Shown: positions 29,523-38,203 of the stretch, piece after piece | How positions within the stretch are numbered: position 1 is the first letter of the stretch | How the letters are laid out: each line of letters begins with the position of its first letter | From: Ramazzottius varieornatus | Lineage: Eukaryota > Animalia > Tardigrada | Direction: 5' to 3' | DNA length: 64,000 nt | NCBI GenBank assembly: GCA_001949185.1 | Contig: BDGG01000008.1 | Span: forward strand, 868,001-932,000 | Notes under the pieces: model-generated | Seen by the model: the letters and a program-made list of their open reading frames with translations, nothing else | Told to the model about the DNA's origin: nothing | Databases searched by the model: none | Program-made: the position numbers and the translations under genes

Positions 29523-31256
29523 TTAGAAAGTAAGACGCTTGTTCACTAGGAATCCTTCCGGTGCTACGTTGTTTTCCTTCGCTTCTTCAATGGGCGTGGC
29601 GATTTTCTCTGCTGGCTGCCCGAGCGGGTCGTTGCGGCTTTCTGGTGTCAAGATAGTTTTCCCTCGTATCCCGATGTTATGGTCTTCCAGCGCGTTGCTT
29701 GCTGCGTTGAGAACCGTCTGCTTCAAGGTTCTTTTCGCCACTCTGCGAACTTTTTCGTACAAGGGAAAAGGGAGAGTCGGAACAGGGTTCTTCGACGGCG
29801 GCTGTTTCTTTCGATTAGGAAACTGTCGAGCCTCCTGGTTCCTAGTTTTCACTTTCGTCTTCCTCACGCATTTCGGATGTCCACACAGATCTCCAGTCCT
29901 CGTGAGGTATGTTATCCAGAAGGGAGGGATTACATGCTCATCCACCGAACTACCTTTCTGTTTCTTACAGATATCGCACATGATCGACGGCTCAGGAACG
30001 AGCATGGTGCCGTCGACCCTTATCGTTTCAAACTGACAAACTTTTGTGGCCTCACTTATGGTCCTCCGAGAAGGATCACCGCCCCTTTGCTGAAGTTGTA
30101 AGATGGCTTCCCTTCTATTCAAGATGCTTGATCGGCTCAGCTGTTTTCTTTTCAAGATTATTTTTAGGTTCTGGCGGAACATCGGATCGCAGCCTCTCAA
30201 TGCGAAGTCCACGGCATCCCATACTTCGCGACTCCGCTTCAGTAGACCCATCAGCCCCGTCCGGGAGAACCCTCTATCATCGCGAGGCTTCCAACGGCGG
30301 CGCTTGATGAACCAATGGCCACCTTGGGTGAGTTCGTTTCGTCTCCGTATCTGCTCCAAACGTTTCTTTTCGTTCTTATGGACCTCTCTAACCACTGACA
30401 CGAATGTGTTGAGCTCTTCGTCTGAACGCAAGTGGCCAGAATGGAGACGGGCTTTAAAGACTTCTAAAGTGTTGAATGTGTTCGTGGTCGGAAACTTTAG
30501 CTCCTTTAGGCTTACACGCAATGGTTTCCCGATATACTTCGCGAACTCAAACCGGTCAGTACTAATTTTATTCCTGTGATCCCACCTGAAAAATATGCAG
30601 GAACTCGATTTTGTCCCTACTTGCATGTAAACTGTTTTTCGTTCTATGCGTGATTCTTCCACACGTTCCTTCACCAACCTGAAGTTTGCGAAAGTGCGGT
30701 TCAAAGCTTTGATCCTTTCAGGTCGCTCTTGCTTAAGGATTGTCTCTTGGCGAAGAGCATTCGTGCAGCTCAACTGGGTCTCGTCAGCTTGGACAAAGAA
30801 ATCGAGTCTACTTCCCGCTTGGTTCATCCCCAGCTGTTCTACATGCTGATTGATTGCCGCCAGCTCCATTTCACAAAGAGCCGCGTCTAGTTTCTCGAAA
30901 CTAGCCGGCAAGCGTCCATCAACTAGTCTAGCTTCTTCACGAAGAAGACCAAGTCCTCCGCTATAAAACCGACGACGAAGGTAAGCATTAAATTTACTGT
31001 CACTGTGTTACAATCGGCGTATAGGATACTTTGTAGGTGAGACTTCAGTGCGAGTTTTTGGATATTCGCGGTTTTGTTGGTTCTCCAGAAAGTTCTTCAC
31101 GACATTTGCGTTGCTTTTCTCGTCGGCCCCTCTTAGAGCACCCCAAGGAAGACCTCTTAGATAGTACGAAAGATTTGAGTCGCAAACTGGCGAGTCAGTT
31201 CTCGAAGGGTTCCTGCGTGGCAGCGGTGAGATACTCCGCACCAAATCGGTTAGCAC
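29523..31256 (-). CDS. Uncharacterised basic protein (>=480 aa); main exon about 29523-30960 plus a probable upstream exon about 31030-31256; start not determined
   Basis: 462-codon open frame with an upstream TTTTATAG acceptor in compatible phase. Lys/Arg-rich, with a CDIC...CGHPKC motif. No family recognised. Confidence 0.55.
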
Positions 31257-32627: not shown

Positions 32628-34355
32628 ATGACGCGCCGCAGGTCCAGCTTCCTCCTTCCCAACACCCACGTTCCATCTGTTGCCGAAGCGGCCGACATCT
32701 CGTCCTATGCGAAACATGCCGGACATGTGCTGCTACTTTTATTCTTCGTCTACGTATTTGAAGACCGGTAAATTCTCCATCTGATCCTTGCGGATCGGTA
32801 ACGAACATGCCCAGTCGTCGCGCACCTACATACTGGGACACGATGAAGCATAATTCACTCCTGTATGCAGGTGCTCGGAAGATTGTTTGTTTTCTGTTCA
32901 CCGACCTTTCATTTTAATTTGTTGACTCTCGCACGGTTCTCAATGCAGATCGTGTGTTGAGTTTCATTACTCTATGCTTGTTGGTCGTTGACAATGACAC
33001 TCTTAGGTTTTCTTTGAATGTCTTGCGTGAAGATTACGTACCACTGTCGCCGCCAGAGGATGACGAGATCCCGTCTGAAGGCCTGGGTCCAATTTTCAAG
33101 ATTGTCCTGTACTTTTCCCGGCTGGCCACTCTGCTCTTGCTGCCGCAAGCAGCTTTTGATTTTGCTGGTTTGGTTATGTTCAATGCGTTCAAGCGAAGGG
33201 TTCCGCTGAGGCACAGTACTCTGGAATCAGACACTTTGGCTATCACCTTCCGAATTGTCACACGCGGCAGCGACCCCGAAAAGATTCGCGAAGTGGTACG
33301 AAGGAACTTGGAGGTCCTCAGCAACTCACCTGCTCAGGTTCAAGCATATCGACTGGAAGTCATCACAGAACAACCCATTGGAATCGAGAAGTATGGAAAC
33401 TTTCTGGAAAGAGTTGTGCCGCAGGAATACCGGACCGGAGGTGCGACGGGAAAGGCAAGGGCATTACAGTACTGCCTCGAGGAACCTTCTGAATCTCTGG
33501 GCAGAAATGAATGGTAAGTAAAGCCCTTTCCCGATTGCAGTTCATCGTCGGGCGATTATAGCTAATTCTCCATTTTCGTACACGTTCTGTAGGGTTGTTC
33601 ATCTGGATGAAAGTGCAGTCCTTTCCGAAGACGCCATCATGGGTGTCTTGAATTTTGCCTGCAAAGGTGGCGCTCAGTTCGGATCTGGCTTGACGACCTA
33701 CACACAGGACGGTATCACGAACTGGCTGACTGCTATTATCGATAGCGCGCAGATCGCTGAAGACCTGGGACAAACCCGCTTCCAGCTCAAGATGTTCCAC
33801 AAGCCACTCTTGGCTTGGCAGGGAGCCTTCTACGTCACTAGTGTGCCGACAGAACGACAAGTTGGCTACCGGCGCCGCTCATCCATTATAATTGACGATC
33901 GGGTGGATGCCGAACAGCACTTTGCTGCCATCTCTTCACGTCTCGGTTATGGCTTCGACTGGATCGATGGGGAAGTACACGCACGCAGCGAGAGTAGCTT
34001 GGCAGAACACATCTTCAACCGGAAACGTCGGCTGCAAGCTGCTTCGGCCATTTCAGCAGCTCACAACACGCCCTACAGCATTGTGCAACATTGGGCGGCC
34101 CGCTTACTCCCACTAACGTTGCCTTCCCTCATGTTCGGACTGCTCTGGTCTGTTCCTACTCTGTTTATCCTTGACCTGGTGTGTGGGTTTATTTTTGCAG
34201 TGCGAGCTTATGCGTATACTTTTGGAGTCCTTCGTAGCTTCCCGGGCGAACCAGCTGTCATGGTCCCTATGGCTTTCGCATCACCGTTCGTCTTCCTGTT
34301 GGATTCTATCCTGGAATCAGCAGTCACTCTTCTTGCTATGGTCCATAAAGATTAA
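32628..34355 (+). CDS. egghead/BRE-3-like GT2 glycosyltransferase (beta-1,4-mannosyltransferase family), divergent, about 469 aa; exons 32628-32767, 33007-33513, 33593-34355
   Basis: KHAGHVLLL...FE, LLLPQ...GLVMFNAF, FRIVTRG, KARALQYCLE, WVVHLDE and QLKMFHKPLLAWQG all parallel egghead/BRE-3. Confidence 0.85.
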
Positions 34356-35317: not shown

Positions 35318-35440
35318 GTGGGACGTGGGCAAAAGACTGAGAACCAGACCGTTCTCAGGTGGTGCACGTCATCATTGTGACTGGCCGAAAGTGTGCGCCA
35401 CTTAGAAAAACAATCTGGTTCATCTCATTTGCCTGAGCCC
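35318..35440. repeat. Palindromic MITE-like repeat, copy 3 (just downstream of the CAHS poly(A) signal)
   Basis: CAGGTGGTGCACGT...GTGTGCGCCACTTAG with outer arms GAACCAGACCGTT / AACAATCTGGTTC. Confidence 0.7.
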
Positions 35441-35492
35441 TGAATCTCAAATACTGTTCTAGAATATTCAACGCAAAGACGACAAACGTCAT

Positions 35493-35498
35493 TTTATT
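35493..35498 (-). terminator. Putative polyadenylation signal of the CAHS gene
   Basis: AATAAA on the minus strand, about 250 nt after the stop codon. Confidence 0.55.
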
Positions 35499-35744
35499 GA
35501 ACCACAAACATGTTCCCATCAAGATAGCAGAAGCAAGCCATGTACAGACAAGACAAGTCAGATCGACAGATGGAGATAAAATTCAAACTTGACCAAAACA
35601 AGCACTAAAATCAGACCGATATTTCAAACCAAAATTTAATATTAGACTACTTCGTACATGACAGCATTACAAAAACTTTGGCGCAAGATGGGAATAAAAG
35701 AGCTCGGTTGACTACACCAAAAGTTGCGCTAGGAAAAAATCAGC

Positions 35745-37377
35745 CTACAGTCCGCCAGTGCGAGATGAGCTGTGCGAAGAACTGTGCTGCTCCGATGACG
35801 ACATCGTGGTTCCACCGCTGACGGTATGTCTGCAAAAGACAAACAAACATGGGCAAAAGTCTAGCTAGGAGAAACACAAAGAGGGAAACTAATGTTCTTA
35901 CCCGGCTGCAGTGTCCATCGTGACTTGGACATCGGTATGCATCTTAGAACGCTCCAACGCATCGTTGGCCAGCTGACGTTCGTGCTCCAAAGCGGCCTTT
36001 GCTCGCTTGGCTTCCAGCTCGATTTCCGCCTTCTGCTTCTCGATGGTACTTCCCACAACTTCCTTGCGGAACCTAAGAGGAGAAAATTCCCAATTAGTAC
36101 GGGAAACTCTGAAATTCTAGAACGATCAGCTCTTCGTCTCAATCAGTACAGAATGACTTACTCGATGTCTCGCTCGTGTTGCTTCTCCAACGCCTTGCGG
36201 ATCTTCTCAGCCTCGTGCTCGGCCTCCTACAAAAGAACAGCTTACAGTTTCGAAAGGAGCACAGGGCAGAATGAGTTTGTAAATACGAAGAGGAACTGAC
36301 CTTGCGGTAGGCTTCCGTCTTCTTTTCCAGGTCCTTGTCAGCATGACGGTTGATGGCCTCCTGTTCACGAGCATATTTCTCCTCATCCCTCATTCGCTTC
36401 TCGCGAGCCTCAGCAGTCTCAACGATGTTGACATCAGCCGACGAGCCAGTGATACGAGCTGCAGAGGCCGTGAAACCCTGTCAAACAGAAAAGACGGAAG
36501 TTAGTTGATAAACGAAACAAACAATCAAGGATCTTCAATTACTCGACGGTACAGTGAGTCAAGGTTGAGATTCAAAATATAAGAAAGTCACTTACTTGAC
36601 CGACGATCTGTTCGGCCATGCCAGATGCTCCGGTGGAGATGATCGGAGGCGCGGTATCGATGACTGGAGCTCGGACCTGAAATTAGAATTCAATACCATC
36701 TTTGAAAGTACCTTGACCCAGGACAATGAGTTCAATGCCGAAGTCAATTTGAATACAATACCTCGGTGTGAGTGTACGAAGTGTTCTTCGAGGCCTCCGT
36801 CGTCATGTGTCCTCCTTCCTGGTGCATGGTTGAAGAGTACTGCGAAGCTCCGGTGACAGCTCCGCCGGTTGAAGAGGACATGTGGGAGGAATGGCTGCTT
36901 GCAGTGGTACCACCGACGCCACCGGTGCGCACCAAGGTGGCATCCGTGGGAGTGAAGTTCTTCAAGTAAAGAAATAATTGCTAGTCACAGCATAGAGCAC
37001 AGTACAGCGTGTAAGGTCAGTGATCACCGAAACCCGACTGTCCAATTGCAAAATCGATAACTGGAAAAAAGCCAGAACCGTATGTGGAAGGAGGAAGGCA
37101 ACTCACCAAAGCGGGATCTCCGTGACCAGTATCGACTCCAACGCGAACTTCCTGCAGACCTTTCTTGTCGTCCACCTTGCGCTAGAAATAACCACAGTTA
37201 GTACCGTAACACCTGAGGCAGCAACGACGAGAAAATGCGAGGAGAAGAAAACGTACTTCCTCGACGCGCTCGAATTTTTGCTGCAAAACAAGAAATGTTC
37301 ATTGTTGATTGATTATGGGAAAGGGAGAACGGCAACATGCTGAAGGACATGGCACTTACTTCGTGGGTATGAGACAT
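35745..37377 (-). CDS. CAHS: Cytosolic-abundant heat-soluble (CAHS) protein, tardigrade-specific disordered protein, 297 aa; 9 coding exons: 37360-37377, 37257-37280, 37107-37181, 36762-36959, 36596-36676, 36301-36477, 36162-36226, 35902-36072, 35745-35829
   Basis: All 8 introns are GT-AG and the spliced ORF is 894 nt. It carries CAHS family blocks [68 protein letters not shown] and [14 protein letters not shown]. No Cys or Trp. Confidence 0.96.
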
Positions 37378-37525
37378 GGTGTAAGAGCTGGGAGACTGTG
37401 CTTGAGGGATTTCCGAACAGGAGGACAGGGAGTGGAGTCCAGAATCTGGGAAGAAACTCAGTAAGGGCGATATGCAAATGGCAGACTAACAACGGAACAA
37501 GGAGAGGAAAACGAAAACATCGGCC

Positions 37526-37533
37526 TTTTTATA
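37526..37533 (-). promoter_or_regulatory. TATA box of the CAHS gene
   Basis: TATAAAAA with GC-rich flanks, about 150 nt upstream of the ATG. Confidence 0.65.
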
Positions 37534-38203
37534 CCGGCACGGCTGATGGGCGTGGTTCAGCCATTTGGTTATTTCCATTCAGAGTTCTTGTACAAAAGGA
37601 GCCACGCTACCAATAGCGACCTCTTATTTCAAACAGCCGTTAACCATTGGCGAAAGTTTCTCCTGGTCAATCCACGCAACACGGTCGACTTCGTACGACT
37701 GAATGCGTTGTTCATCGAATCGATACGGAAAGTCCTGTCTTTTTTAGCTGTTCTCCGTAGGTGGAGTTATCTATGTACAGCAGGCCATCGCGTGCAAGGT
37801 CGAGTGCGCAGTGTTCTACCTCTTGCACATGCCTCCATTGTCAAAGCCGTATCTTCTGGTGTAATGTATGCAGGTCTAGGACGCAAGGTATACTGGTTGA
37901 CGCTTGACACTGGTGAAAATTTTCTTCCAAACAGCTGGGTTTGTCTAATTGTTCTCATACGAAGTCGAAAGTCTTTCAACTCCATTCATGAACTCTGGAT
38001 CTTGATGCTTCCACCTTGTCCGGGGTTCTTGTTGAAGCAAACGAAGGAGCCGTAGTTCGATCCAGCGGAGTCGAGAAGATGCACGCAACAGCATCGACAG
38101 AAGCAAGTACTGTACGGGAGTGAGGTCCAGTTTCCGACAGAAGTGATGCAGCGATATTGTTTCCTTTGAGCACAGACTGGACATTTGTCTCCACCTTGCA
38201 AAG

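What the first reader, a model, noticed from the sequence alone, without database searches (positions are those of the whole stretch)
35745..37377. Hidden 9-exon CAHS gene: tardigrade-specific desiccation-protection protein
Seen: splicing nine small minus-strand exons at canonical GT-AG sites gives a 297-aa protein, [72 protein letters not shown]...[201 protein letters not shown]. It is very hydrophilic and has no Cys or Trp. A Ser/Thr/Gly/His-rich disordered N-terminus precedes a charged amphipathic helical region of about 90 aa. The gene has a TATA box and an AATAAA. Established: these blocks define the CAHS family, heat-soluble eutardigrade proteins unrelated to LEA that form helices, filaments or gels on water loss and contribute to anhydrobiosis. 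Inference: this is an abundantly expressed anhydrobiosis effector, and it identifies the genome as tardigrade. The ORF track shows only fragments of it.
Basis: partly seen in the sequence, partly recalled or inferred. Interest (0 to 1): 0.95.

Follow-up and report, generated by a model that had tools for sequence, protein, structure and literature searches.

The report
Known tardigrade CAHS12 gene, correctly spliced

Summary
Nine minus-strand exons between 37377 and 35745, all with GT..AG introns of 72-147 nt, join into an 894-nt reading frame for 297 aa with no Cys or Trp.

That product is 297/297 identical to GenBank GAV02446.1 / UniProt A0A1D1VNN8, "CAHS12 [Ramazzottius varieornatus]".

- **Family membership:** it shares 59% identity over 181 ungapped residues with the founding member RvCAHS1. 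It matches the solved CAHS D helix, PDB 9rkp, at E 7e-29.
- **Fold:** the model has one confident helix, aa 154-257, between low-confidence termini.
- **Other families:** no Pfam family matches. Every named relative is a eutardigrade CAHS, apart from two automatic JGI labels.
- **Published work:** CAHS12 is a major heat-soluble protein. It reversibly forms filaments and granules under hyperosmotic stress and gels in trifluoroethanol. [quoted passage not shown]

The gene was "hidden" only from a prokaryote-style ORF list.

Junctions, transcription start and poly(A) site therefore rest on the database identity, published EST clones and ortholog collinearity.

Verdict: interpretation supported, already known, low interest.

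The parts
37360..37377 (-). Exon 1: ATG and codons 1-6, donor GTAAGT
   Evidence: The N-terminal start is shared by orthologs in alignment A1.
37257..37280 (-). Exon 2: aa 7-14, a 24-nt micro-exon
   Evidence: Collinear with orthologs.
37107..37181 (-). Exon 3: aa 15-39, part of the N-terminal extension specific to the CAHS12 clade
36762..36959 (-). Exon 4: aa 40-105, a Ser/Thr/Gly/His-rich low-confidence region that ends in the conserved YTHTE block
36596..36676 (-). Exon 5: aa 106-132, the conserved PPIISTG..IVG block
36301..36477 (-). Exon 6: aa 133-191, the GFTASAARI block and the start of the long helix
   Evidence: PDB 9rkp, E 1.4e-4; 16 hits among 1.84 billion representatives.
36162..36226 (-). 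Exon 7: aa 192-213, a conserved helical motif that includes L204; it ends in phase 2
   Evidence: This phase-2 intron position is shared by several paralogs.
35902..36072 (-). Exon 8: aa 213-270, a conserved helical motif that includes L241, plus the end of the helix
   Evidence: 9rkp, E 2.2e-10; 15 such places in the genome.
35745..35829 (-). Exon 9: aa 270-297, the Ser/His-rich tail and the TAG stop
   Evidence: No further exon resembling the orthologs' Lys-rich tail was found downstream.
37528..37533 (-). TATAAA, 156 nt upstream of the ATG: a candidate core promoter element
   Evidence: sequence only. Use was not tested.
35493..35498 (-). AATAAA, 246 nt after the stop: a candidate poly(A) signal. 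An ATTAAA at 35640-35635 is an alternative.
   Evidence: sequence only. Use was not tested.

Best explanation
This is the CAHS12 gene of the eutardigrade Ramazzottius varieornatus, called 'putative CAHS5b' in the 2023 homology-based nomenclature. It is a single-copy, nine-exon gene. Its product is cytoplasmic-abundant and heat-soluble. In water the protein is largely disordered. Its central region of about 100 residues is highly charged and forms a long helix. When water is withdrawn (hyperosmosis, desolvation, drying), the helices associate in a coiled-coil-like way into filaments and a reversible gel. That gel is thought to support cells and membranes mechanically during anhydrobiosis, and it dissolves on rehydration. 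Shown here: the gene model, its identity to the database protein, family membership, and the helix prediction. Shown in the literature: abundance, heat solubility, filaments or granules, gelation, and the region required. Inferred: its contribution to survival in the animal.
For: The gene model has canonical splice sites. The product is 297/297 identical to P0032, 'CAHS12 [Ramazzottius varieornatus]', GAV02446.1, A0A1D1VNN8. Exons 6, 7 and 8 hit PDB 9rkp (CAHS 94063) collinearly at chain residues 6-40, 42-61 and 63-110. The whole protein hits it at E 7.2e-29. Identity to RvCAHS1 is 59% over 181 aa with no gaps, E 4e-74. Invariant and near-invariant columns fall in the helical motifs. The AF2 helix 154-257 has pLDDT above 94 between low-confidence termini. 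Leu stands at positions 204 and 241, as in the published L204P and L241P mutants (PMC9592077). From PMC9592077: CAHS12 is one of three major bands in the resolubilised fraction; its CDS was cloned from EST clones; it stays soluble after 99 C; it forms reversible filaments in human and insect cells; it gels in TFE; and H2-H3-CR1-CR2 are necessary and sufficient. A bioRxiv preprint (10.1101/2025.08.07.669088) reports that CAHS12 stabilises vesicles through drying.
Against: CAHS12-mEGFP gave no gain in osmotic tolerance in HeLa cells, possibly because expression was low (PMC11930778). No loss-of-function test of CAHS12 in the animal turned up in the four papers I read on it. My hydrophobic-moment test did not show the helix to be significantly amphipathic.
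Confidence: 0.96

Rival explanations
1. The gene is CAHS12, but filament or gel scaffolding is not its main job in the animal. Instead it would act mainly as a molecular shield, a water-retaining or vitrifying agent, or a partner that recruits other CAHS proteins such as CAHS8 into mixed assemblies.
For: CAHS8 co-localises with CAHS12 filaments (PMC9592077). CAHS12 shows both granules and filaments and some nuclear preference. It gave no osmotic-tolerance gain in HeLa cells. The vitrification versus water-retention debate is noted in PMC9592077.
Against: A single Leu-to-Pro change in the helical motifs abolishes filaments (PMC9592077). The protein gels on its own in vitro. The helix is the most conserved part of the protein.
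Confidence: 0.15
2. The protein is a conventional coiled-coil or LEA-type protein that only resembles CAHS by composition.
For: It has a highly charged (53% KRDE) long helix with a low-complexity flavour. One weak sub-threshold Pfam hit was found: CEP152, E 0.14.
Against: No Pfam family, LEA families included, matches the whole protein. The only PDB sequence match is a CAHS protein. Exon 6 finds only 16 of 1.84 billion representatives, and the named ones are all CAHS. The match to RvCAHS1 is ungapped at 59%.
Confidence: 0.01
3. The locus is an unexpressed or decaying paralog, and the neat splicing is fortuitous.
For: No expression data could be laid here.
Against: The 894-nt frame runs intact across nine exons. 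The sharp exon/intron GC contrast supports real exons. The next-best place in the genome is only 53-68% identical, so the published EST-derived CDS and the mass-spectrometry band can only come from this locus (PMC9592077).
Confidence: 0.01

Closest known systems
CAHS12 of Ramazzottius varieornatus (GAV02446.1, UniProt A0A1D1VNN8; 'putative CAHS5b' in PMC10799326)
   Same: Identical at all 297 residues. It has the same length, and Leu at 204 and 241 as in the published mutants.
   Different: Nothing differs. This is the same gene.
CAHS D / CAHS 94063 of Hypsibius exemplaris (PDB 9rkp, 110-residue chain)
   Same: The helical core aligns without gaps, aa 157-261 to chain 6-110, E 7.2e-29.
   Different: CAHS12 carries an N-terminal extension of about 60 aa, with its own conserved block and a Ser/His-rich insert, and a different C-terminal tail. 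The two fall in different CAHS clades in the quick tree.
RvCAHS1 (J7M799 as cited in PMC11930778), founding member of the family
   Same: 59% identity over 181 aa with no gaps, covering the YTHTE block through the C-terminal GGTT block.
   Different: RvCAHS1 is 237 aa against 297 aa. Its reported assemblies also differ, with filamentous structures and some plasma-membrane accumulation for CAHS1 against granules plus filaments for CAHS12.
Orthologs: H. exemplaris BV898_05814 (OQV20263.1), Paramacrobiotus metropolitanus XP_055330565.1, and about 20 unnamed environmental transcripts
   Same: They share the N-terminal extension and core at 55-64% identity, and form one clade (SH-aLRT 86).
   Different: Most clade members end in a Lys-rich tail (consensus KSLGEKIKD). 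The Ramazzottius and Hypsibius proteins lack it, and no such exon lies downstream here.
Group 3 LEA proteins and intermediate filaments (functional analogies only)
   Same: Like LEA proteins, it shifts from disorder to helix on drying. Like intermediate filaments, it polymerises through coiled-coil-type helices (the analogy drawn in PMC9592077).
   Different: There is no sequence or Pfam relationship. CAHS is confined to eutardigrades (PMC10799326).

Membership tests
CAHS (cytoplasmic-abundant heat-soluble proteins, Eutardigrada) | Sequence homology to founding CAHS proteins across the conserved core | tested here: met
   RvCAHS1: 59% over 181 aa, no gaps, E 4e-74. CAHS D in PDB 9rkp: E 7.2e-29. 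83 relatives were found, and the named ones are CAHS.
CAHS (cytoplasmic-abundant heat-soluble proteins, Eutardigrada) | Conserved C-terminal helical motifs (CR1 and CR2 of PMC9592077) | tested here: met
   13 invariant and 32 near-invariant columns, nearly all between aa 170 and 263, in a 36-sequence alignment. The motif borders as drawn in the paper's figures could not be read.
CAHS (cytoplasmic-abundant heat-soluble proteins, Eutardigrada) | One long central helix flanked by disordered or low-confidence termini | tested here: met
   The AF2 helix spans 154-257 with pLDDT 94-98, and the termini are mostly below 60. This agrees with the AlphaFold DB description in PMC11930778.
CAHS (cytoplasmic-abundant heat-soluble proteins, Eutardigrada) | Heat solubility | not testable with these tools
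   Literature: recombinant CAHS12 was recovered from the supernatant after 99 C for 15 min (PMC9592077).
CAHS (cytoplasmic-abundant heat-soluble proteins, Eutardigrada) | Cytoplasmic location and abundance | not testable with these tools
   Literature: it is a major band in the R. varieornatus resolubilised fraction, and the GFP fusion lies in cytosol and nucleus (PMC9592077). The hydrophilic N-terminus seen does not look like a signal peptide, but no predictor was run.
CAHS (cytoplasmic-abundant heat-soluble proteins, Eutardigrada) | Restriction to eutardigrades | tested here: inconclusive
   All relatives with an organism name are from Ramazzottius, Hypsibius, Paramacrobiotus, Macrobiotus or Acutuncus.
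CAHS (cytoplasmic-abundant heat-soluble proteins, Eutardigrada) | Reversible stress-dependent filament, granule or gel formation | not testable with these tools
   Literature: shown for CAHS12 in HEp-2, S2 and HeLa cells and in vitro with TFE (PMC9592077, PMC11930778).
LEA proteins | Match to a Pfam LEA family | tested here: not met
   No Pfam family matched at E up to 1, either for the whole protein or for the exons.

The most novel reading that the evidence does not exclude
RvCAHS12 has three lineage-specific peculiarities. It carries a Ser/His-rich insert at about aa 57-72, echoed by a similar Ser/His-rich C-terminal tail. That tail replaces the Lys-rich tail kept by most members of its clade. 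The gene also has two introns (5/6 and 6/7) that most paralogs lack. These features might tune its unusual mixed filament/granule behaviour, its nuclear preference or its co-assembly with CAHS8, so the termini rather than the helix would set the assembly mode.
Probability: 0.12. Interest if true: 0.25.

Novelty: already known. Interest (0 to 1): 0.08.

Why it matters
CAHS proteins are central to current models of how tardigrades survive drying, and they are being tried as stabilisers for cells, vesicles and biologics. This particular gene is already annotated, cloned, mutated and modelled. The value here is confirmation: a reader working from raw sequence alone recovered an eight-intron gene exactly and identified the organism. 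It adds no new biology.

Tried and rejected
- **RNA evidence:** Neither was retried or worked around.
- **Joined model:** I sent it to no search tool. Exons were searched one by one by reference. After the database returned an identical protein (P0032), I used that id.
- **Pfam:** nothing for the exons or the whole protein. The founding CAHS proteins also match no Pfam family above threshold (RvCAHS1 has only one sub-threshold hit), so Pfam has no CAHS model.
- **Missed tenth exon:** I looked for one encoding the orthologs' Lys-rich tail and found none.
- **Second CAHS copy in the window:** none.
- **Amphipathicity:** the hydrophobic-moment test was not significant.
- **Tree:** the careful search did not finish in time, so only the quick tree is reported.
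- **Fold search:** not run, because a single long helix matches any coiled coil and would not discriminate.
- **Complex prediction:** not used, because self-assembly is already shown experimentally.
- **Earlier findings:** those near this place concern other genes in the window, and a word search for CAHS returned nothing.

Full report
**1. Observation**

Reading the minus strand of 35400-37800 and cutting at the landmarks gives nine exons:
- 37377-37360
- 37280-37257
- 37181-37107
- 36959-36762
- 36676-36596
- 36477-36301
- 36226-36162
- 36072-35902
- 35829-35745

Every intron begins with GT and ends with AG after a pyrimidine-rich tract. Intron lengths are 72-147 nt.

The joined frame is 894 nt and encodes 297 aa plus TAG. 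Exons are 56.9% GC and introns 40.3%, against 47.4% for the window.

TATAAA is at 37533-37528. AATAAA is at 35498-35493, and an ATTAAA lies at 35640-35635.

**2. Identity**

- Exon 6 (59 aa) found only 16 proteins at E <= 0.001 among 1.84 billion representatives. Those with names are CAHS proteins of Acutuncus, Paramacrobiotus and Ramazzottius.
- Exons 6, 7 and 8 hit one PDB sequence only: 9rkp, 'Cytosolic-abundant heat soluble protein 94063'. The hits are collinear, at chain residues 6-40, 42-61 and 63-110.
- A search from the best full-length hit (P0001) returned 83 relatives. Among them was P0032, 'CAHS12 [Ramazzottius varieornatus]', 297 aa.
- A script showed that the spliced window product equals P0032 at every residue.
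- P0032 is GAV02446.1 / UniProt A0A1D1VNN8, on a contig of 2,054,787 bases. A0A1D1VNN8 is the accession that PMC11930778 gives for CAHS12.
- The window's assembly has 55.84 Mb in 200 contigs. From my own knowledge, that fits the published R. varieornatus genome.
- The published point mutants CAHS12-L204P and CAHS12-L241P require Leu at 204 and 241. The window protein has Leu at both (PMC9592077).

**3. Family and anatomy**

P0032 aligns to the founding member RvCAHS1 at 59% identity over 181 residues without a gap, E 4e-74. It aligns to the CAHS D helix in 9rkp at E 7.2e-29.

In a 36-sequence alignment the invariant and near-invariant columns lie almost wholly between aa 170 and 263. Further conserved blocks lie at aa 101-140. 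No Pfam family matches CAHS12, and the two reference CAHS proteins tested (RvCAHS1, CAHS 94205) match none above threshold.

AlphaFold2 with that alignment gives one helix, aa 154-257, with pLDDT 94-98. The termini are low-confidence with weak hairpins. This matches the description of the AlphaFold DB model in PMC11930778.

The helix is 53% charged. A hydrophobic-moment test against shuffles was not significant (z 1.4), so I do not endorse 'amphipathic' on my own evidence.

A quick tree places the protein in one clade (SH-aLRT 86) with:
- H. exemplaris BV898_05814
- P. metropolitanus XP_055330565.1
- a set of environmental sequences

This clade shares an N-terminal extension encoded by exons 1-4.

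**4. Support for the splice model without reads**

Indirect support comes from five sources:
- **Database identity:** the product is identical to the annotated protein.
- **Published cloning:** the CDS was amplified from EST clones, and the protein was identified as a major gel band (PMC9592077).
- **Ortholog collinearity:** orthologs on contigs of 1.0-1.3 kb are too short to hold 739 nt of introns. They run collinear across all eight junctions with no indel there.
- **Exon borders:** ortholog tblastn matches to exons 5, 6 and 7 stop within one codon of the predicted borders.
- **Single copy:** the next-best place in the genome is 53% identical for exon 6 and 68% for exon 8.

**5. Mechanism**

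For CAHS12 itself, the following is shown in the literature:
- It is heat-soluble.
- It is dispersed in cytosol and nucleus, then reversibly forms filaments or granules under hyperosmotic stress in human and insect cells.
- The filaments resist hexanediol.
- It co-assembles with CAHS8.
- It gels reversibly in 20% TFE.
- The region H2-H3-CR1-CR2 is necessary and sufficient.
- Single Leu-to-Pro changes disrupt assembly (PMC9592077).

A preprint reports that CAHS12 stabilises lipid vesicles through drying (10.1101/2025.08.07.669088).

Its contribution to survival in the animal is inferred. CAHS12 gave no IC50 gain in HeLa cells, possibly because expression was low.

**6. Context**

The genome holds at least 15 places like exon 8 and 10 like exon 6. 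These include tandem sets on contig C1 (about 2.616-2.620 Mb) and on C14. CAHS12 stands alone in this window.

In most paralogs the equivalents of exons 5, 6 and 7 are contiguous. The phase-2 intron after exon 7 is shared by several paralogs. CAHS12 is therefore comparatively intron-rich.

The downstream neighbour, convergent with CAHS12, has an open frame with a glycosyltransferase family 2 match.

**7. Verdict**

The thing is already known: annotated in GenBank and UniProt, renamed in a family phylogeny (PMC10799326), and the subject of functional papers. Interest is low.

Noticed in passing
window 33639-34355 (+): A 238-aa open frame matches Pfam Glyco_trans_2_3 (PF13632, E 2.8e-7). It is probably an exon of a family-2 glycosyltransferase gene lying convergent to CAHS12, about 1.1-1.4 kb beyond its 3' end.
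   Followed up: partly
window 29523-30911 (-): A 462-aa open frame, unusually long for this intron-rich genome, has no Pfam match at E <= 0.001. It is probably a large exon of an uncharacterised gene.
   Followed up: partly
G000:C1:2615950-2619732 (loci L005, L009, L003) and G000:C14:693330-696266: Tandem arrays of CAHS paralogs lie on one strand: three genes within about 4 kb on C1 and two within 3 kb on C14. CAHS12 is a singleton.
   Followed up: partly
L002-L009 compared with window 36162-36676: In most paralogs the equivalents of CAHS12 exons 5, 6 and 7 are contiguous, with no intron. The phase-2 intron after exon 7 (GA|GT) recurs in L002, L003, L004, L007 and L008. L007 shares the 5/6 intron.
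   Followed up: partly
G000:C7:638615-638773 (+): The exon-8-like match in this paralog contains one TAA stop. It could be a decaying copy or an extra intron.
   Followed up: no
P0087 (H. exemplaris BV898_04552) in alignment A1, columns about 284-366: It is identical to CAHS 94205 up to the last helical turns, then diverges completely. That looks like a frameshift or mis-splice in that genome's annotation.
   Followed up: no
P0073 and P0082 (JGI contigs of about 1 kb): Environmental CAHS homologs carry automatic names ('HflC', 'hydroxylamine reductase') that do not fit their 49-50% identity to the CAHS query P0001. These are probably mis-annotations of tardigrade transcripts in metatranscriptomes.
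   Followed up: no
window aa 57-72 (exon 4, about 36790-36745) and aa 281-297 (exon 9): Two similar Ser/His-rich stretches ending in T-G-G occur in the N-terminal region and at the C-terminus. Their codons differ, so this is not a recent duplication. Only the Hypsibius ortholog has residues at the insert position.
   Followed up: partly
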